Below are positions 12,290-54,200 of a stretch of DNA of 64,000 nt, one piece after another (within the stretch, counting starts at the first letter, position 1; each line of letters opens with the position of its first letter). Location of the stretch: positions 126,855-190,854 of the forward strand of contig NIVC01002236.1 in assembly GCA_002269645.1 (NCBI GenBank), written 5' to 3'. Under the pieces are notes generated by a model, which did not search any database, was not told the DNA's origin, and saw nothing but the letters and a program-made list of their open reading frames with translations. Position numbers and translations under genes: made by a program. The DNA comes from Macrostomum lignano (taxonomy: Eukaryota).

Positions 12290-14270
12290 TCATTCACTAC
12301 TCACTCGTGACCTCATTCATAAACTCAACTCACTTATCAATTCACTCAGCAATTTACTCATCAATTCACTCACCAATTCACTCATCAATTCACTCATCAA
12401 TTCACTCATCAATTCACTCATCAATTCAGTCATCAATTCCCTTGGCAATTCACTGACCAATTCACTCATAAATTCACTCACCAATTCACTCATCAATTCA
12501 CTCATCAATTCCCTCGGCAATTCACTCACCAATTTACTCATCAATTCACTCATGAATTCAGTCATCAATTCACTCATTAATTCACTCACCAATTCACTCA
12601 TTAATTCACTCATCAATTCACTCACCAATTCACTCATCAATTCACTCATCAATTCAGTCATCAATTCGCTCACCAATTCACTCATCAATTCACTCATTAA
12701 TTCACTCACCAATTCACTCATTAATTCACTCATCAATTCACTCACCAATTCACTCATCAATTCACTTACCAATTCACTCATCAACTCACTCATCAATTCA
12801 CTCATCAATTCACTCATCAATTCACTCATCAATTCCCTTGGCAATTCACTGACCAATTCACTCATCAATTCACTCACCAATTCACTCATCAATTCACTCA
12901 TCAATTCCCTCGGCAATTCACTCACCAATTTACTCATCAATTCACTCATGAATTCAGTCATCAATTCACTCACAAATTCACTCATCAATTCACTCATTAA
13001 TTCACTCACCAATTCACTCATCAATTCACTCATCAATTCCCTCGGCAATTCACTCACCAATTTACTCATCAATTCACTCATGAATTCAGTCATCAATTCA
13101 CTCATTAATTCACTCACCAATTCACTCATTAATTCACTCATCAATTCACTCACCAATTCACTCATCAATTCACTCATCAATTCAGTCATCAATTCGCTCA
13201 CCAATTCACTCATCAATTCACTCATTAATTCACTCACCAATTCACTCATTAATTCACTCATCAATTCACTCACCAATTCACTCATCAATTCACTTACCAA
13301 TTCACTCATCAACTCACTCATCAATTCACTCATCAATTCACTCATCAATTCACTCATCAATTCCCTTGGCAATTCACTGACCAATTCACTCATCAATTCA
13401 CTCACCAATTCACTCATCAATTCACTCATCAATTCCCTCGGCAATTCACTCACCAATTTACTCATCAATTCACTCATGAATTCAGTCATCAATTCACTCA
13501 CAAATTCACTCATCAATTCACTCATTAATTCACTCACCAATTCACTCATTAATTCACTCATCAATTCACTCACCAATTTACTCATCAATTCATTCATGAA
13601 TTCAGTCATCAATTCACTCACCAATTCACTCATTAATTCACTCATTAATTCACTCATTAATTCACTCACCAATTCACTCATTAATTCACTCATCAATTCA
13701 CTCACCAATTCACTCATCAATTCACTTACCAATTCACTCATCAACTCACTCACCAATTCACTCACAGATTTACTCACCAATTCACTCATCAGTTCACTCA
13801 TCAATTCCCTCGGCAATTCACTCACCAATTTACTCATCAATTCACTCATGAATTCAGTCATCAATTCACTCACAAATTCACTCATCAATTCACTCATTAA
13901 TTCACTCATCAATTCACTCACCAGTTTACTCATCAATTCACTCATGAATTCAGTCATCAATTCACTCACCAATTCACTCATCAATTCACTCAATTAATTC
14001 ACTCACCAATTCACTCATTAATTCACTCATCAATTTACTCACCAATTTACTCATCAATTCACTCATGAATTCAGTCATCAATTCACTCACCAATTCACTC
14101 ATTAATTCACTCAATAATTCACTCACCAATTCACTCAATAATTCATTCATCAATTCACTCACCAATTCACTCATCAATTCACTTACCAATTCACTCATCA
14201 ACTCACTCACCAATTCACTCACAGATTTACTCACTGATTTACTCATCAATTCACTCATCAATTCACTTAT
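12290..14270. repeat. 12-bp satellite AATTCACTCATC with a 528-bp higher-order duplication
   Basis: Rare variant aattcgctca recurs at 12663 and 13191. Confidence 0.96.
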
Positions 14271-14572
14271 TTTCGTTCATAAACTCATTATTCATACTTG
14301 TGAAAATTAATAACCTAAAATTTGATTCTTCTACGCAAGTTTTTCATCTGTGATACTAGTAAGCTACTGACCAAGAATTAGATGCGAGTAGCATCATAGA
14401 ATATTGCCGTCTAAAAATGAAAAAAGCAGACAACAGTAGGTAAAATCTCTTTTTATTTTGCTTTTCTGCTATTAGTAGTATATTTCCACAACAATTTCGT
14501 TAAGTGTCCTTAAAAGTTCAGCACCGAAAATCTTGAACTCGGAATCAAGTTGTGAGTAACAGATCCAGCTTC

Positions 14573-14872
14573 TCAAACTGGAATCTTGTTCTCAGACCAC
14601 GGGTGCATCTCGATGTGTCCGTCCTCTGCCTCGACCAGACTCATCGGGTTTGTGTCCGGCATCATCTCGATGTGTCCGTCAATTTGCAGCAGCTTATCCA
14701 GGGTGTCCGGATCGATGTCCCAGTCTTCGTCAATCTCGTCCAGCTGGTAGTGCACTTTCTCGCCGTCAACCACGGACTCGACGAAATCTCCGGAATGGAC
14801 ACCCTGGCGGGGGTTGGCGGCTGCGGCAACAGCCACCAGCAGAGCGAATAGCAGAGCACAGAATTTGGCCAT
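14573..14872 (-). CDS. Uncharacterised 99-aa secreted acidic peptide with two DGHIEM motifs
   Basis: MAKFCALLFALLVAVAAAA signal peptide; GC-rich codon usage in AT-rich flanks; upstream UTR intron 15407 (GTAAGT) to 14887 (ttccAG). Confidence 0.8.
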   Translation of the reverse strand: MAKFCALLFALLVAVAAAANPRQGVHSGDFVESVVDGEKVHYQLDEIDEDWDIDPDTLDKLLQIDGHIEMMPDTNPMSLVEAEDGHIEMHPWSENKIPV

Positions 14873-14924
14873 TTTCTTGCTGTCTTCTGGAAGCAGGAAT
14901 TGGAAATGTTGTTTCAATTGTAAG

Positions 14925-15345
14925 GTCACTCTATGAGACCGAGTGAGGTCTCTCTATGAGACTGAGTGAGGTCACTCTATAAGACTGAGTGAGGTCACTC
15001 TATGAGACTGAGTGAGGTCACTCTATGAGACTGAGTGAGGTCACTCAATGAGACTGAGTGAGGTCACTCTATGACATTGAGTGAGATCACTCTATAAGAC
15101 TGAGTGAGGTCACTCTATGAGACTGAATGAGGTCACTCTATGAGACTAAATGAGGTCACTCTATGAGAATAAGTATGGGCACTCTATGAGACTTAGTGAG
15201 ATCAATCTATGGAACTTAATGAGGTCACTCTATGAGACTGAGTGAGGTCACTCTTTAAGACTAAGTGAGGTCACTCTGAGACTAAGTGAGTTCACTCTAT
15301 CAGACTGAGTGAGGTCACTCTATCAGACTGAGTGAGGTCACTCCA
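14925..15345. repeat. 23-bp minisatellite GAGGTCACTCTATGAGACTGAGT in the peptide gene's 5' UTR intron
   Basis: Direct reading. Confidence 0.95.
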
Positions 15346-15940
15346 ATTAAGAAAATTACCCAAATACTAACAAACAGGGGCAATAGTTGCAGAAGTTAAT
15401 GACTTACCAATCAGTTTATTTCTATCGTGTTAACCTTCCAGTCAGGCAATGAATTTCAAAGCTTGGTTTTTAAGTCTCTCTTTAATAGCTAGTCGAAATT
15501 ATGTGACCCATTATATCTGAGTAATTGGAACTGGGACCCTTGAGTCCTTATCAGCCTCGAGCAACCGCGGTGTTCTCTCATGGCCCAGAACTGCCTGACC
15601 GAGACAATAAAAAACAATTACGTGTACTAACTGCTACTGAGCAGGGCTTTTGTTTTAGCCGTGTGAATTTCAACATCATGCGAAATCCACAATAATTGCT
15701 TTTTCCTCTCTATTGGATATTTTGTCTTCGGGTGACGGGGGAATGCGACACCTGGCATTGGAAAGAATGGCGCCATTCTTCTGATGGTGTCAAATGCCGC
15801 CTGATAATGCCGGGTCATAAACGCTTAATTGAGGATAAATTGAGCGGCTTTTCCGGCTCCTCAAACTTGGCTTCAAGCGAGAACTTTCAGGGGCAATCGG
15901 ATCCATACTGTTTCAAGTCCAGTCGATATTCGAGTTTGAG

Positions 15941-17997
15941 ATGAAACTTCTGAGCATTCTGGCGCTCCTGGCGCTGGCGACCGCCGCTCTCGGCGCCCGC
16001 CTGCCCGAGACCTCGGCCGTGGCGCGGACGTTCTCCGACGATGAGAACGAGTCGCTGAACCAGTACATCAAGGCTCTGCTGGAGAACCTCAAGGAGGAGA
16101 TGCCGAACGGCATTCCAGACCTCAACATCCCGCCGCTGGAGCCGCTGCACCTGCCGGAGATCTACGCCGACATTGAGGAGGGCATGGCCAAGGTGCGCCT
16201 GCACATGCTGGACCTGCTGATCGAGGGCCTGTCTGGATTTGTTGTCCGCGAGGTCAAAGGCGACCTGAACACCATGAGCTTCTCCTTGGACCTGTTCCTG
16301 CCCGAGATCACCGGCCAGAGCTACTACGATATGGATGTGAGTTGGCTAGCGCGCTCTGCAGCTACTGCTAGTAGCTTAGTAGCGAATGTTGGAACTGTTT
16401 TTAAACGCGACCACGATTCCACCCTGCTGTGAGCTTGTAGTTTCCTGACTCATTGCTCTGAGGCATATAATGAGTTTATAAGGTCCGTAATAACCTGAGG
16501 GTGTTCGTTAGTTACTTACTGACTCAGCTCCTGACTCAGCTCCTGACTCAGCTCCTGACTCAGCTCCTGACTCAGCTCCTGACTCAGCTCCTGACTCAGC
16601 TCCTGACTCAGCTCCTGACTCAGCTCCTGACTCAGCTCCTGACTCAGCTCCTGACTCAGCTCCTGAGTAAGTTAATGAGTAAGTTCCTGAGAAAGTTAAT
16701 GAGTAAGTTCCTGAGAAAGTTAATGAGTAAGTTCTTGAGTAAGTTAATGAGTAAGTTCCTGAGAAAGTTAATGAGTAAGTTCCTGAGAAAGTTAATGAGT
16801 AAGTTAATGAGTAAGGTAATGAGTAAGGTAATGAGTAAGTTAATGAGTAAGTTCCTGAGTAAGTTAATGAGTAAGTTAATGAGTAAGTTAATGAGTAAGG
16901 TAATGAGTAAGTTAATGAGTAAGCTCCTGAGGGACTTCATGAGTGAGTTTATGCGCAGCTCTAAACGCCTATTTAAAAACATTTTCTGACCTCAACGCAT
17001 CGCGGATTTCCAGGGCAAGGTGCTCATCTTCCCGCTGTACGGCCGCGGCATGGCCGGCCTGAAGGTGAACGATCTGCACTTCAAAGGCACCGCCCGCATC
17101 GTCATCAAGGATATGGAGAGCATCCAGCTGGATCACTTCAACATCCACGTCGAGTTCTCGCAGATCCAAATCTACCTGGAGAACATCGTCGGCGGCGGTA
17201 ACCTTGGCAACGTGGTGAACACCCTGCTGAACATGCTGGGCAAGCTGCTATACGACAAGTTCCGGGACCAGATCCTGCCTCCGCTGAACAACATCATCAA
17301 GAACGCGCTGAACGAGCAGCTGGCCAAGATCAAGCTGTCCGACCTCATCGGAGGCATCGGCCGGGCGCCCCGCAGCCGCTTCAGCGTGTCCCCGGTCCAG
17401 GACTCCGTCAACACTTACGTCGACATGCTGATGGAGAACCTGCGCCCCTTCATGCGCGACAACGGCATGGACCCGCTGAGCCTGCCGAACCTGTCCACCA
17501 GCTTCTCCAAGAAGATCTGGTTCGTCACCTGGCGCGGAGGTGCCAGCATCAGCCAGGGTCAGCTGCGCAGCCTCTCCAGCATCCACCGCACCGGCAACTT
17601 CGGCTTGGACCAGTCGGGCAACCGCCTCACCATTGACGGCTCCGTGGGAGTGAACCAGCTGTGGGGCAGCTTCAGGGCCCTTGCCTGGTTCATGTCCATC
17701 CGCATCTCTGCCGGCATCCAGCTGACCGTCCAGCGGATTCGAGTTCGCGCCCGCCTGCACGCCGACGTCAGCGACCTGAAGGCGGTGCTGGACCTCTTCA
17801 AAATCTCCGAGATCTCCAACATCGGCGTGAAGGTCAGCGGCCTGGGCCCTCTGAACTGGATTCTGGGCCCCATCGCCACTCTGGTTGTCAACGGAGTTCG
17901 CGGCAAAATTGCCCAGGCCATTGAGAGCCCGGTGAAGGCGAAGGTTAACGAGTTGCTGCAGAACCTGCAGATGCCCAACTTCAGCCAGATGCACTGA
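15941..17997 (+). CDS. Secreted 459-aa tandem TULIP-type lipid-binding protein: JHBP/takeout-like + group 7 allergen (Der p 7)-like domain; exons 15941-16336, 17014-17997
   Basis: Signal peptide. Domain 1: GIPDLNIPPLEPL, YYDMD|GKVLIFPLYGRG, GGGNLGNVVN. Domain 2: NTYVDMLMENL..GMDPLSLP, LSSIHRTG, VSGLGPLNW. Phase-0 GTGAGT..ccAG intron; AATAAA near 18077. Confidence 0.82.
16518..16930. repeat. Two adjacent 12-bp arrays (CTGACTCAGCTC; GAGTAAGTTAAT) in the TULIP gene intron
   Basis: Direct reading. Confidence 0.95.
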
Positions 17998-18529
17998 GCG
18001 AGTTCGAGTTGAGAGAGACACAAGCAGGATATTAACTAACTGTGTGCTTCTGTGCACTTTTGAGTTTGAATTATGAAATAAACAAATTATAAGCTATGCT
18101 CATGTTGTTACATTATTGATTGTTTATCAAGGGCAAAGTAAAGCTAAGAAGTTTTGTTGTGGCGTTAGCCGCAAAGCAAAATTACTCCCAATACTCAGGC
18201 AGTGACTCCAGACGCAGCAGGGGTGGGTCGAAATCCTGGGATTGTAGGAAAGTTCCGTTTTAAATTAAACTGAATATCGTACTTAGCATCCTCACAGATA
18301 TTTGTTAGATTTCACTTGCACTGTCTAGACTTGATATCACATTGCCAACATAATTCCACAACCTATATCTCCCAATGGGAGTTCAGCTCCCAATTCCCAT
18401 ACCCTTCGCATTCCATGCATCTCCCTGCATTTCCCTACATCTTCTTCAACTAATTCCTCCAAGAATCTCCCTGATCCCCCTTCGTCCACGCATCTCCATA
18501 CATCCATGCCTATCCCCATCCCTCTTTGA

Positions 18530-19345
18530 GTGAGAGATTCGAATACCTGTCTCTGAGAAGTCAAGCCAATTCATGCCATTTTGCAGCCCTGACCCCCCGA
18601 TAACGTTGCTGACCCAAAGGCTGCTTAAGCCAATTGTCACGCAAGCCCAGTTACTGAGGTCAAGTTTGACTTTCATCGCAGGTTGTGAAGCTGTCTGCTG
18701 AACAGCCTGAGTACCGATTGCTGCCCAGTAATTAGCAGTAAATTTCTGCAGCGCAGCCTTGGCAACCGGAGAATCGCAATGTTTAACTTTCTAACTACTG
18801 ACAAATTGGAGTAGTATGCGATAACCGGCCACTGATTTGTTTATTTTTACACACACGTCCGAACTTCTGAAATATAATAATAGAACTAATTAGGCGAAAA
18901 TGCCTGAGGTAAAATGGTCTCGTATTCACTGCAGACTGAACCCGTTGTGAGGCCTTCCGGTTAGTTTGTTGGTGTTGGTTACATGTGACTGCGGCTGGCT
19001 GCTTGTGGAGTTCAATGGTTTACAGATTTGAAGGGCCTGGTGGGGAGATGCGTGAGATAGAGGGTAGGAGATGTGGGACAGAGGGTGGGAGATGTGGGAT
19101 AGAGGGTGGGAGATGTGGGATAGAGGGTGGGAGATGTGGGATAGAGGGTGGGAGATGTGGGATAGAGGGTGGGAGATGTGGGATAGAGGGTGGGAGATGT
19201 GGGACAGAGGGTGGGAGATGTGAGATCGAGGGTGGAAGATGTGGGATAGAGGGTGGGAGATGTGGGATCGAGGGTGGGAGATGTGGGATAGAGGGTGGGA
19301 GATGTGGGATCGAGGGGCGAGATGTGGGATCGAGGGTTGGAGATC
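18530..19345. repeat. Left inverted arm flanking ZF copy A (unique ~500 bp plus 21-bp GGGAGATGTGGGATAGAGGGT array)
   Basis: Reverse complement of 22325-23095; partial copies at 28826-29330 and 32860-33110. Confidence 0.85.
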
Positions 19346-19822
19346 TGAGTTAGAGGGTGTAAAATTATTATACAATACAACACAGTACAATTTAATACAA
19401 GTCATATAAGAAACGTTTTAATGTATTTTAATGCGGTTATCAGAATTAAACCAAATGTAAAATGTAAAAACATTGCTCACTTTTAACCACCAATCTGCGA
19501 GATCGACTCTCTGTACCTTTCCCTCCTGTTAATTCCCTTCTGCAAGCAGCAGTTGCTGCTTATTCCCTCAGACTTTACCTGCTATTCCATCCGGTACAGA
19601 GTTGGCACCATTCAGCGGGGGTCCGGGGGTCACCCGGCCGTCGCGCCGACCCCCCGCAGCGCTCGCAGCCACCGCAGCCGCGCCCGCCTCGTGCCGCTGC
19701 CGCCCCCGCTGTGCCGCAGTTTTCCCAGGCTGAAAACCCGAGCGTCCCTGCAGCTGGGGGATTTGCGGCTCTCCGCAGCTCAACTGTCTATGGCCGGCCT
19801 CCCGCTGCGGCTGGGGACTCTC

Positions 19823-19911
19823 ATTGGCTCTGAGCTGCCAGCCAATAGCAGCGAAGCTGCCCTCACTCAGCCTGAGGCGGCTGGGTTGGCGACCTGGGAG
19901 ACACCATAAAA
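19823..19911 (+). promoter_or_regulatory. Putative ZF promoter: opposed ATTGG/CCAAT boxes and TATA-like CATAAAA after a GC-rich island
   Basis: ATTGG 19823, CCAAT 19842, CATAAAA 19905; CCAAT pair also present in copies B and C. Confidence 0.4.
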
Positions 19912-20039
19912 CTGTGGCTCACCAGAAATGTTGGTTCTTCATTGTTGCTGAGCACGGAGTCCGCCGGTCCGGGCTTCTGATAAAGACTCTCAACTCTTCA
20001 CCTGCCGTGTGCTTGATTTAGCAATTTTTCACTCTGGAA

Positions 20040-21388
<1,349 letters not shown>

Positions 21389-21854
21389 ATAATCGCTAAA
21401 TGCCCTATGCGCTTCGATTGCTACTCACAACAGTAGTGTTTTGATATCAGCTGCGATTGACTGATCTTCAATGATTCTGTAAATATGCTTTCCTACCCGT
21501 TTCGGCGATTTGCTTACCGTAGTATTTTGTTGAGGTTTTAATTATAATATTGCTTTTTTATAATATTGCTCTCAACTTGCTGCTCTAATATCCACGTGTT
21601 TAATATTTTTTACAATGATTTGCTTGACGATTGTAATATTTAACTGTATCTGCACCTGCATGCGCTGTTCTGTGTGTGTGGTGTCACTTTATTATTAAAG
21701 GATGCAACTTCTGATTAAATATAAGGTGCTTTCGTGTGTTTCATTTCTTTATTATGACCAAAATTCAATTTGATTGGCTGGCTTTTGTTGATTTTGTTAT
21801 AATTATTGTTATACTGACATTTTCAAAAGTGGCTACGGCAATCGGAGAGAACTC

Positions 21855-24160: not shown

Positions 24161-26930
<2,770 letters not shown>

Positions 26931-51200: not shown

Positions 51201-54200
51201 AGAGAGGGAGATGGGAGGGAGAGAGGGAGATGAGAGGGAGAGAGGGAGATGGGAGGGAAGAGGTTGATGAGAGGGCGAGAGGGAAATGGGAGGGAAGAGG
51301 GAGATGAGAGGGAGAGAGGGAGATGAGAGGGAGAGAGGGAGATGGGAGGGAGAGAGGGAGATGAGAGGGAGAGAGGGAGATGAGAGGGAGAGAGGGAGAT
51401 GGGAGGGAAGAGGGAGATGAGAGGGAGAGAGGGAGATGGCAGGGAAGAGGGAGAGAGGGAGATGGGAGGGAGAGAGGGAGATGAGAGGGAGAGAGGGAGA
51501 TGAGAGGGAGAGAGGGAGATGGGAGGGAGAGAGGGAGATGGGAGGGAGAGAGGGAGATGGGAGGGAGAGAGGGAGATGGGAGGGAGAGAGGGAAATGGGA
51601 GGGAGAGAGGGAGATGAGAGGGAGAGAGGGAGATGGGAGGGAGAGAGGGAGATGAGAGGGAGAGAGGGAGATGAGAGGGAGAGAGGGAGATGGGAGGGAA
51701 GAGGGAGATGAGAGGGAGAGAGGGAGATGGCAGGGAAGAGGGAGAGAGGGAGATGGGAGGGAGAGAGGGAGATGAGAGGGAGAGAGGGAGATGAGAGGGA
51801 GAGAGGGAGATGGGAGGGAGAGAGGGAGATGGGAGGGAGAGAGGGAGATGGGAGGGAGAGAGGGAGATGGGAGGGAGAGAGGGAAATGGGAGGGAGAGAG
51901 GGAGATGAGAGGGAGAGAGGGAGATGGGGAAATGGCAGGGAAGAGGGAGAGAGGGAGATGGGAGGGAAGACACAAATTCAGCAATTCGTCGGCAGAGAAA
52001 CACCGAAACCCGGAGCTGTGGCCAGCAAGTATCGGGGGGGGGAGCTCAAAGACACGAGTACAACCCCGGAGGAACTCACTAATACTGCTAGGCTTGTCTC
52101 CGCTGCCAGCTGCAATATCGGAGGCATCGAGAGCGCTGGAGTCCTGGCCGGAGCCGCCGCCGCAAGCTCCGGTGTCGCTGTGCCGAGACGAGAGCTCGTC
52201 AAAGTTCAACTCCGGCGGTGACGAGTCGCCAGAGTGCAGCAGAAGATGAGCAGCAGCGAACTGTTGCTGTTGTTGTTGTTGTTGTTGCTGCTGCTGTTGC
52301 TTCCGCTGGCGTTGGCCACTAGGAGAAGAGGCTGCAGCAGCCATGCTTTGGTGAAGCGGCTCCTGAGGCAGAGTGTGATACGGCGGCTTGTTCATGGCGT
52401 CGACTCGGTGGATGTGCACCGGCTGGATGGTGGAGTAGTGCTTCAGGATCAGCGGCTCCAGACGGTAGGCCTTAAGAAAAATAAGTTAAAAAAATCAATT
52501 CTAGACGTGAGATTTGTACTTTTATGGCAATTAGTTATAGGAGATATAGATTTCCCTTACATGAGGATATGGGAGATTTCCCTGACATGAGGATATGGGA
52601 GATTTCCCTGACATGAGGATATGGGAGAATTCCTGACACGAGGATATGGGAGATTTCCCTGACATGAGGATATGGGAGATTTCCCTGACATGAGGATATG
52701 GGAGATTTCCCTGACATGAGGATATGGGAGAATTCCCTGACATGAGGATATGGGAGATTTCCCTGACATGAGGATATGGGAGATTTCCCTGACATGAGGA
52801 TGTGGGGTAATTCCCTGACATGAGGATATGGGAGATTTCCCTGACATGAGGATATGGGAGATTTCCCTGACATGAGGATATGGGAGAATTCCCTGACATG
52901 AGGATATGGGAGATTTCCCTGACATGAGGATATGGGAGATTTCCCTGACATGAGGATATGGGAGATTTCCCTGACATGAGGATATGGGAGAGTTCCCTGA
53001 CATGAGGATATGGGAGAATTTCCTGACACGAGGATATGGGAGAGTTCCCTGACATGAGGATATGGGAGAATTCCCTAACACGAGAACATGGGAGCATTCT
53101 TCGACATGAGGATATGGGCAAATTTCCCAACGGAGCTAATAACAAAATAAAAATAAAATTGAAATTGAAATTTATACTTACAACAGGATCAGCTGGGTGG
53201 TAAATATTATAGATTCGGTTCACAATAGACTTTGGCACAATATCCTCCTGGGTGCCGTTGCCCTTTGGTCGAATGCCGCGCAGAGCCAGAAACACGGCGA
53301 GAGGAGAGCCGAGACAGAACAGATTCTCCAGCTGTTGTGTTCGGAGGTTTTGACATCCAATTAAGATGGAGATTAATCTTTATGAACTAATAATTATTAA
53401 TTGATATGTGCACCCAAATGTACACCTATCACGAAACAATATTAAACAGTGTACAGTCAGCCAGTTAGAAAAGCCAATCCCAGAACCCCCCATCAATCCT
53501 AGGCAGTGTACATTCAGCCAGTTAGAAAACTCAACCCCAGAACGACCACCTTACTCCACCGCATCAATCCTAGGCAGTGTACATTCATCCAGTTAGAAAA
53601 CCCAACCCCAGAACCACCACCCTACTCCACCGCATCAATCCAGGCAGTGTACATTCAGCCAGTTAGAATAGCCAACCCCAGAACCACCACCCCACTCCAC
53701 CGCATCAATCCAGGCAGTGTACATTCAGCCAGTTAGAAAACTCAACCCCAGAACGACCACCCCACTCCACCGCATCAATCCAGGCAGTGTACATTCAGCC
53801 AGTTAGAATAGCCAACCCCAGAACGACCACCCCACTCCACCGCATCAATCCAGGCAGTGTACATTCAGCCAGTTAGAATAGCCAACCCCAGAACGACCAC
53901 CCCACTCCACCGCATCAATCCAGGCAGTGTACATTCAGCCAGTTAGAATAGCCAACCCCAGAACCACCACCCCACTCCACCGCATCAATCCAGGCAGTAT
54001 AAATTCAGTCAGTTAGAATAGCCAACCCCAGAACCACCACCCCACTTCACCGCATCAATCCAGGCAGTGTACATTCAGCCAGTTAGAATAGCCAACCCCA
54101 GAACGACCACCCCACTCCACCGCATCAATCCTAGGTAGTGTACATTCAGCCAGTTAGAATAGCCAACCCCAGAACGACCACCCCACTCCACTGCATTAAT

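What the first reader, a model, noticed from the sequence alone, without database searches (positions are those of the whole stretch)
15941..17997. JHBP/takeout + Der p 7-like tandem lipid-binding protein in an apparently non-arthropod genome
Seen: signal peptide and two TULIP-type domains with JHBP and group-7-allergen signatures; the gene has a host-style repeat-filled intron, so it is integrated and not contamination. Known: both families are described mainly from arthropods (hormone, odorant and lipid carriers). Inference: the USP gene and genome architecture suggest a flatworm, implying either a wider ancient distribution of a secreted two-barrel hydrophobic-ligand carrier or horizontal transfer. 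One of the strongest novelty candidates here.
Basis: partly seen in the sequence, partly recalled or inferred. Interest (0 to 1): 0.75.

Follow-up and report, generated by a model that had tools for sequence, protein, structure and literature searches.

The report
Flatworm takeout/Der p 7 double lipid-binding protein
This is a real gene of the flatworm Macrostomum lignano for a secreted protein built from two tube-shaped lipid-binding domains of a family the literature treats as arthropod-only, so it is a rare non-arthropod member of that family, though not a new kind of protein.

Summary
Window 15941-17997 (+) is a two-exon gene: exon 1 15941-16336, a phase-0 GT-AG intron 16337-17013 filled with 12-nt minisatellites, and exon 2 17014-17997. 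It encodes a 459-aa, cysteine-free protein with a signal-peptide-like N-terminus. Pfam gives JHBP (E=8e-47) followed by Grp7_allergen (E=4e-27). An AlphaFold2 model (pLDDT 88) matches Der f 7 and Takeout 1.

The JHBP+Grp7 two-domain architecture is not new. All 49 full-length relatives tested have it. Every relative that carries an organism name is an arthropod (horseshoe crabs, a pseudoscorpion, decapods, ostracods, insects). A 2025 paper already reports the architecture in shrimp.

What is unusual is the host. The same paper found the JHBP domain only in arthropods among 22 species. I found no paper discussing a flatworm member.

The flatworm-type sequences form a well-supported clade with two deep subfamilies. 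Deeper branching is unresolved, so ancient descent and arthropod-to-flatworm transfer cannot be separated.

Most likely function: a secreted carrier of lipids or other hydrophobic ligands. Moderate interest; new member of a known kind.

The parts
15941..16336 (+). Exon 1: start codon, signal-peptide-like N-terminus (residues 1-18, nt 15941-15994) and the first part of the JHBP/takeout-type TULIP domain (to residue 132)
   Evidence: ORF and splice donor read directly. Exon 1 gives a 100% tblastn match to P0001.
16337..17013 (+). Phase-0 spliceosomal intron (GTGAGT...TTCCAG) between D132 and G133
   Evidence: The junction is continuous in relatives' transcripts. The position is not shared with the Limulus, Procambarus or ostracod genes.
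16529..16949 (.). 12/24-nt minisatellite arrays inside the intron (CTGACTCAGCTC-type, then TGAGTAAGTTAA-type)
   Evidence: Tandem Repeats Finder. Copy number differs in the duplicate contig L011.
17014..17997 (+). Exon 2: rest of the JHBP domain (to about nt 17349, residue 244), a basic linker (residues 245-258), the Grp7_allergen/Der p 7-type TULIP domain (nt 17407-17952, residues 264-445) and stop TGA
18077..18082 (+). AATAAA, a candidate polyadenylation signal about 80 nt after the stop
   Evidence: Read directly. Not otherwise tested.

Best explanation
This is a genuine nuclear gene of the free-living flatworm Macrostomum lignano. It encodes a secreted, cysteine-free, two-barrel ('pseudodimeric') TULIP protein. 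The N-terminal barrel is of the takeout/JHBP type and the C-terminal barrel is of the Der p 7 (group 7 allergen) type. It belongs to the same JHBP+Grp7 tandem subfamily that is widespread in arthropods. Shown here: the gene model, host, domain identities, fold, family membership, and the existence of a flatworm-type clade with two old subfamilies. Inferred: after signal-peptide cleavage the protein works outside the cell. Each barrel shields a hydrophobic ligand (a lipid, isoprenoid or microbial lipid) in its internal cavity and carries or hands it over in aqueous fluid, as takeout, JHBP, Der p 7 and BPI/LBP do. The Pfam name 'JHBP' does not imply juvenile-hormone binding. The origin of the family in flatworms is left open: descent from a protostome ancestor with wide loss, or an old transfer from an arthropod.
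For: Gene model and splice sites. Pfam JHBP 8e-47 and Grp7_allergen 4e-27. The protein is 100% identical to the M. lignano protein on the 190,854-bp contig NIVC01002236.1. A 46%-identical M. lignano paralog exists (UniProt A0A1I8J6J4), and related transcripts come from four other SRA runs. PDB sequence search with the family profile gives Der p 7 at 1.4e-23, Takeout 1 at 4.8e-21, LBP at 1e-4 and BPI at 8e-4. The AF2 model has pLDDT 88. Foldseek gives Der f 7 at TM 0.73-0.80 and Takeout 1 at TM 0.66, and also finds JHBP, the locust carotenoid-binding takeout protein, BPI and LBP. All 49 full-length relatives carry both Pfam domains. Named relatives include Scylla 'juvenile hormone binding protein 4', Limulus, Procambarus, ostracods and a pseudoscorpion. 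Shrimp have three JHBP+Grp7 genes (PMC12256323). Ligand-carrier roles of takeout, JHBP, Der p 7 and BPI are reviewed in PMC5507252.
Against: There is no expression, localisation or ligand data for this protein. The signal peptide was judged by eye and hydrophobicity only. The relative orientation of the two barrels is uncertain (pTM 0.59; TM only 0.23 against BPI/LBP over the full length). The N-terminal disulfide typical of takeout proteins is absent: the protein has no cysteine. The N domain is acidic (pI 4.7), unlike the cationic LPS-binding N domain of BPI (the BPI property is from general knowledge).
Confidence: 0.85

Rival explanations
1. Horizontal origin. The family entered an ancestor of Macrostomum from an arthropod, for example a co-occurring small crustacean. 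It then acquired a host intron, host codon usage and a duplication.
For: All 13 named relative clusters are arthropods. A 22-species survey found the JHBP domain only in arthropods, with oyster, leech, nematode and deuterostomes negative (PMC12256323). In the midpoint-rooted NJ tree the flatworm-type clade sits among arthropod clades rather than outside them. The single intron has no counterpart in three arthropod genes.
Against: Support for any node above the flatworm-type clade is below 50%, so nesting is not demonstrated. The closest relatives (38% and 34% identity) have unknown organisms. The two subfamilies are only 46% identical, which implies long residence in the lineage. Animal-to-animal gene transfer is rare (general knowledge). 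Only the top 150 of 2560 hits were listed, and 30 of those were checked for an organism name.
Confidence: 0.3
2. It is a carrier for a sesquiterpenoid hormone (farnesoic acid, methyl farnesoate or similar), that is, a functional counterpart of JHBP or the crustacean MF-binding protein in a flatworm.
For: There is a strong JHBP-family match. A crustacean JHBP-domain protein binds methyl farnesoate (PMC12256323). Sesquiterpenoid signalling has been reported outside arthropods (PMC5127642 and PMC9181382, titles and abstracts).
Against: Bona fide JHBPs are described as a lepidopteran-specific branch with a conserved disulfide (bioRxiv 10.64898/2026.06.25.734463), and this protein has no cysteine. 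Sequence similarity to solved JHBPs is weak (E 0.07-0.23 with the Macrostomum profile) compared with Takeout 1 and Der p 7. No flatworm sesquiterpenoid hormone was found in my literature searches.
Confidence: 0.1
3. It is the flatworm's functional equivalent of BPI/LBP: a two-barrel innate-immune sensor or transfer protein for microbial lipids.
For: It has the same two-TULIP secreted architecture. The family profile reaches the LBP and BPI N domains at E 1e-4 to 8e-4. Foldseek aligns the whole model to BPI/LBP at E about 1e-9. UniProt labels the paralog 'BPI2 domain-containing'. Two of the 49 relatives hit Pfam LBP_BPI_CETP. Der p 7 binds a bacterial lipopeptide (PMC5507252).
Against: The window protein gives no LBP_BPI_CETP Pfam hit at E<=1. 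Its N domain is acidic rather than cationic. It has no BPI-type disulfide. Global TM to BPI is only 0.23.
Confidence: 0.25
4. It is arthropod DNA contaminating or mis-assembled into the flatworm assembly.
For: All named homologs outside Macrostomum are arthropods.
Against: The gene lies inside a 190-kb contig. It is flanked by, and split by, the same kind of minisatellites as the rest of the window. A second assembled contig carries the same locus over 9 kb. A 46% paralog was annotated in M. lignano (a UniProt entry), and related GC3-rich transcripts occur in four other SRA runs. No arthropod sequence is closer than 38% identity.
Confidence: 0.02

Closest known systems
Arthropod JHBP+Grp7_allergen tandem proteins (e.g. 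Scylla paramamosain 'juvenile hormone binding protein 4' QDP16282.1, Limulus XP_013775127.1, Procambarus XP_045612996.1, three Litopenaeus vannamei genes)
   Same: Same order of the two Pfam domains, same length (about 430-490 aa), a hydrophobic signal-peptide-like N-terminus in the members whose N-termini were read, cysteine-poor, and alignable end to end. The architecture is published for shrimp.
   Different: Only 24-29% identity. The host is a flatworm. The intron position is not shared. None of these tandem proteins has a described function, as far as I found.
Epiphyas postvittana Takeout 1 (PDB 3E8T) and the takeout family
   Same: The N domain matches at E=4.8e-21 with the family profile, and by fold with TM 0.66. 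Both are secreted single-tunnel carriers of a hydrophobic ligand (PMC5507252).
   Different: Takeout proteins are single-domain and have two conserved N-terminal cysteines (abstract of PMC5496735). This protein has none and carries a second barrel.
Der p 7 / Der f 7 mite group 7 allergens (PDB 3H4Z, 3UV1, 9HAE)
   Same: The C domain matches at E=1.4e-23 (family profile) and by fold with TM 0.73-0.80.
   Different: The mite allergens are single-domain proteins. Here the domain is fused behind a takeout-type domain and is strongly basic (pI 10.45).
BPI / LBP / CETP / PLTP pseudodimeric TULIPs (PDB 1BP1, 4M4D)
   Same: Secreted, two tandem TULIP barrels. There is weak but significant profile similarity of the N domains, plus full-length Foldseek hits.
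   Different: No Pfam LBP_BPI_CETP hit for this protein, no conserved disulfide, an acidic N domain, and low global TM (0.23).
Drosophila CG3246, the only two-TULIP BPI-like protein of the fly
   Same: The preprint describes it as a secreted head-to-head pseudodimer listed under the takeout/JHBP InterPro entries. Its deletion is lethal in first-instar larvae (bioRxiv 10.64898/2026.06.25.734463).
   Different: I could not compare sequences because CG3246 was not among the proteins retrieved. Orthology is untested.

Membership tests
Takeout/JHBP family (Pfam PF06585) | Match to the family HMM above the curated cut-off | tested here: met
   159.9 bits against a cut-off of 29.2, E=8e-47, covering profile positions 3-238 of 239.
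Takeout/JHBP family (Pfam PF06585) | TULIP fold: N-terminal helix, long twisted beta-meander, long C-terminal helix | tested here: met
   AF2 secondary structure for residues 33-235. Foldseek to Takeout 1 3E8T gives E=4.6e-12 and TM 0.66, and also finds 9INK, 2RCK and 3AOS.
Takeout/JHBP family (Pfam PF06585) | Two conserved N-terminal cysteines (disulfide) described for takeout proteins | tested here: not met
   The 459-aa protein has no cysteine. The whole two-domain subfamily, arthropod members included, is cysteine-poor with no conserved pair. The feature is as stated in the abstract of PMC5496735.
Takeout/JHBP family (Pfam PF06585) | Secretion signal | tested here: inconclusive
   The N-terminus has a hydrophobic core and an ALG|A motif. 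No signal-peptide predictor was available.
Bona fide lepidopteran haemolymph JHBP | Conserved disulfide linking the long C-terminal helix to the beta-meander; high-affinity JH binding | tested here: not met
   No cysteine. The feature is from bioRxiv 10.64898/2026.06.25.734463. JH binding is not testable here.
Group 7 mite allergen family (Pfam PF16984) | Match to the family HMM above the cut-off, and Der p 7-like fold | tested here: met
   95.9 bits against a cut-off of 21, E=4e-27, covering profile positions 2-178 of 180. Der f 7 gives TM 0.73-0.80. Der p 7 gives E=1.4e-23 with the family profile.
JHBP+Grp7 tandem subfamily (arthropod two-domain proteins) | Both domains in N-to-C order in one chain of about 430-490 aa, alignable end to end | tested here: met
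   All 49 full-length hits carry both Pfam domains. Matches span profile positions about 30-448.
BPI/LBP/CETP family (Pfam PF01273 + PF02886) | Match to the LBP_BPI_CETP HMMs | tested here: not met
   No hit at E<=1 for the window protein. Only 2 of 49 relatives hit PF01273. The family profile reaches LBP and BPI only at E 1e-4 to 8e-4.
BPI/LBP/CETP family (Pfam PF01273 + PF02886) | Head-to-head boomerang arrangement of the two barrels | tested here: inconclusive
   pTM is 0.59. The full-length Foldseek alignment to 1EWF/4M4D has TM 0.23 and rmsd about 30 Å.
Any TULIP lipid carrier | Hydrophobic internal cavity that binds a lipid or hydrophobic ligand | not testable with these tools
   Needs cavity analysis on coordinates or binding assays.

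The most novel reading that the evidence does not exclude
The takeout/Der p 7-type double-TULIP is not an arthropod invention. It dates at least to the protostome ancestor, survives in macrostomid flatworms, and represents the intermediate that links single-barrel takeout and Der p 7 proteins to the BPI/LBP pseudodimers. The alternative, about equally interesting, is a rare animal-to-animal transfer of a secreted lipid carrier from a crustacean or chelicerate into a flatworm lineage.
Probability: 0.4. Interest if true: 0.55.

Novelty: new member of a known kind. Interest (0 to 1): 0.4.

Why it matters
The takeout/JHBP/Der p 7 family is treated in reviews and surveys as arthropod-specific. A recent preprint leaves open whether the insect two-barrel member is related to BPI-type pseudodimers or arose independently. 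A well-supported family of the same two-barrel type in a flatworm gives an outgroup, or else a transfer case, for dating the N+C fusion. M. lignano is a laboratory model, so function could be tested outside arthropods. The practical weight is modest. The protein type is known, the sequence is already in public databases, and no function can be assigned yet.

Tried and rejected
1. The word-indexed protein search found only the Macrostomum-type sequences (a single sequence, a 5-sequence profile and an 8-sequence profile). A 49-sequence profile timed out. Taxonomic names therefore had to come from 30 cluster look-ups.

2. I tried to identify the organisms behind the closest unnamed relatives. Sample accessions were obtained. 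A literature search for those accessions and for the gene id Mlig021288 found nothing. The 5' ends show no shared spliced leader.

3. NJ trees with bootstrap for the full length, N domains and C domains support only the flatworm-type clade (99/100/77%). Everything deeper is below 50%, so no HGT-versus-vertical call is possible.

4. Intron positions were compared with the Limulus, Procambarus and ostracod genes. The flatworm intron is not shared, which does not discriminate between the two origins.

5. The first AF2 run, with only five close sequences, gave pLDDT 46 and was discarded.

6. The 'second copy' Mlig021288g2 turned out to be a near-identical duplicate contig with a 1-nt homopolymer deletion, not an independent paralog.

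7. No tandem paralog exists in the window (tblastn).

8. Literature searches for JHBP or takeout in flatworms or Macrostomum found nothing relevant.

Full report
**Observation**

Window 15941-17997 on the + strand holds a two-exon gene. Exon 1 (15941-16336) starts with ATG and ends before a GTGAGT donor. The intron (16337-17013) ends in TTCCAG. Exon 2 (17014-17997) ends in TGA. The intron is phase 0, between D132 and G133. The spliced CDS gives 459 aa with GC3 of 0.89.

The intron contains 12/24-nt tandem arrays at 16529-16949. Similar minisatellites lie at 14000-14267, 14923-15343 and 19043-19359. The splice junction is supported by mRNA-like contigs of relatives, whose ORFs read straight through the conserved YYDxDGKVLIFPLYG motif.

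**Domains and fold**

Pfam gives JHBP (PF06585) at E=8e-47 over residues 9-244. It gives Grp7_allergen (PF16984) at E=4e-27 over residues 264-445. Both are far above the curated cut-offs and nearly full-length on the profiles.

Against PDB sequences, a profile of the close relatives matches Der p 7 (3e-10, C domain) and Takeout 1 (8e-10, N domain). A profile of 49 full-length relatives raises these to 1.4e-23 and 4.8e-21. That profile also reaches the locust takeout-family carotenoid binder, JHBPs, and, weakly, the N domains of LBP (1e-4) and BPI (8e-4).

AlphaFold2 with five close sequences failed (pLDDT 46). With the 49-sequence alignment it gave pLDDT 88 and pTM 0.59, with the pattern helix, long beta-meander, long helix appearing twice. 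Foldseek against the PDB returned:
- Der f 7, TM 0.73-0.80 on the target
- Takeout 1, TM 0.66
- Der p 7, the locust beta-carotene-binding protein and JHBPs
- BPI and LBP over the full length, at E about 1e-9 but TM only 0.23

The two TULIP barrels are therefore confirmed. Their mutual orientation is not.

**Host and integration**

The protein is 100% identical to 'hypothetical protein BOX15_Mlig021288g1 [Macrostomum lignano]'. It is encoded on contig NIVC01002236.1 (190,854 bp) of assembly GCA_002269645.1. M. lignano is a macrostomid flatworm: Platyhelminthes, Rhabditophora.

A second contig (NIVC01003036.1) is collinear with window 12397-21430. Over the 5 kb around the gene it differs only by indels. 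One of these is a 1-nt deletion in a C-run at window 17368, which explains the truncated 'g2, partial' annotation. This is a duplicate or haplotype contig, not a second gene.

Independent family members do exist:
- a 46%-identical M. lignano protein (UniProt A0A1I8J6J4, labelled 'BPI2 domain-containing')
- three transcript-derived proteins at 77%, 46% and 46% identity, from four different SRA runs, all with high GC3 like the window gene

Arthropod contamination can be set aside.

**Relatives**

An exhaustive HMMER search of 1.84 billion representatives found 2560 proteins at E<=1e-3, and 97 at E<=1e-30. Many of the top hits are 430-490 aa and match end to end. All 49 full-length hits tested carry JHBP followed by Grp7_allergen.

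I looked up 30 clusters for organism names. The 13 that carry one are all arthropods:
- chelicerates: Limulus and Tachypleus (horseshoe crabs), and the pseudoscorpion Cordylochernes
- decapods: the crab Scylla (one entry named 'juvenile hormone binding protein 4') and the crayfish Procambarus
- ostracods: Notodromas and Darwinula
- insects: the thrips Frankliniella and the beetle Agrilus

Identity to the window protein is 24-29% for named two-domain arthropod proteins. It is 38.5% for a single-domain horseshoe-crab protein over the N domain.

The closest non-Macrostomum-type sequences are P0007 (38%) and P0008 (34%). They come from marine or aquatic metatranscriptomes and an SRA run whose organisms I could not determine.

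**Literature**

A 2025 JBC paper surveyed 22 animal genomes. It found JHBP domains only in arthropods and none in oyster, leech, nematode or deuterostomes. The same paper reports three shrimp genes that combine JHBP with a Grp7_allergen domain (PMC12256323).

Wong and Levine (2017) describe JHBP, Takeout and Der p 7 as one arthropod family related to CETP/BPI (PMC5507252).

A 2026 preprint notes that Drosophila has one two-TULIP member, CG3246. Its deletion is lethal in first-instar larvae. The preprint says it is unclear whether CG3246 is orthologous to BPI-type pseudodimers. It also argues that true JHBPs are a lepidopteran-specific branch with a conserved disulfide.

Searches for JHBP or takeout in flatworms or Macrostomum found nothing relevant.

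**Features of the protein**

- It has no cysteine. The whole two-domain subfamily is cysteine-poor, so the takeout N-terminal disulfide and the JHBP or BPI disulfides are absent.
- The N domain is acidic (pI 4.7).
- The linker and the C domain are basic (C domain pI 10.45).
- There are three N-X-S/T sequons.
- The N-terminus looks like a signal peptide, but no dedicated predictor was available.

**Origin**

NJ trees with 100 bootstraps place the window protein in a clade with the M. lignano paralog and the three transcript-derived proteins. Support is 99% for the full length, 100% for the N domain and 77% for the C domain. The clade splits into two subfamilies. All deeper nodes have under 50% support.

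The flatworm intron position is not shared with Limulus (one intron, after the signal peptide), Procambarus (nine introns) or the ostracod gene (eight in the first 450 residues).

These data fit two scenarios:
- an old gene with wide loss and intron turnover
- an old transfer from an arthropod followed by intron gain and duplication

I put descent at roughly 0.55 and transfer at 0.3, with the remainder undecided.

**Mechanism**

The best-supported reading is a secreted two-barrel carrier. Each TULIP barrel encloses a hydrophobic ligand and moves it through extracellular fluid. This is how takeout (isoprenoid/ubiquinone), JHBP (JH), the locust carotenoid binder, Der p 7 (lipopeptide) and BPI/LBP/CETP (phospholipid, LPS, cholesteryl ester) work.

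The fold and family membership are shown. Secretion, the cavity and the ligand are inferred. A hormone-carrier role and a BPI/LBP-like immune role are both possible sub-hypotheses. Neither is favoured by the sequence.

**Verdict**

The architecture is known from arthropods and the protein is already in public databases. The novelty is therefore limited to the phyletic position: a clear non-arthropod member of a family that the literature treats as arthropod-only. I classify it as a new member of a known kind, with interest 0.4.

Noticed in passing
window 17368 (C-run in exon 2); L011 about 5565: The duplicate M. lignano contig NIVC01003036.1 matches the locus with essentially no substitutions. 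It has a 1-nt deletion in a CCCC run, which frameshifts the gene and produced the truncated 'Mlig021288g2, partial' annotation. This is probably an assembly indel or a haplotig.
   Followed up: yes
window 12317-14267, 14923-15343, 19043-19359, 20096-20888: Large minisatellite arrays (12-, 23- and 21-nt units, among others) surround the gene. They create long spurious ORFs (e.g. 12552-13997) that give meaningless low-complexity Pfam hits. Copy numbers differ between the two assembled contigs.
   Followed up: partly
window 24247-25494 (-): An ORF with RNase H (E=1.8e-13) and a weak RVT_3 match, probably a retroelement remnant.
   Followed up: no
window 52531-53295 (-): An ORF whose first 38 residues match the DDHD domain (E=3e-6, just below the Pfam cut-off). 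It may be an exon of a DDHD-type phospholipase gene.
   Followed up: no
window 15941-17997, protein residues 33-244 versus 259-450: Strong charge asymmetry: the N barrel has pI 4.7 and the C barrel pI 10.45. The protein has no cysteine. This is the reverse of BPI, whose N domain is the cationic one (the BPI property is from general knowledge).
   Followed up: partly
related proteins P0009, P0027, P0037, P0031: Arthropod relatives vary in domain number: ostracod N-C-C-C (907 aa), thrips N-N-N-N (935 aa), beetle C-C. A single-domain horseshoe-crab protein is 38.5% identical to the flatworm N domain, closer than any named two-domain arthropod protein.
   Followed up: partly
literature, PMC13514124: A sea anemone (Heteractis magnifica) tentacle transcriptome lists two Grp7_allergen transcripts. 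This could be another non-arthropod occurrence, or contamination from prey or commensals.
   Followed up: no
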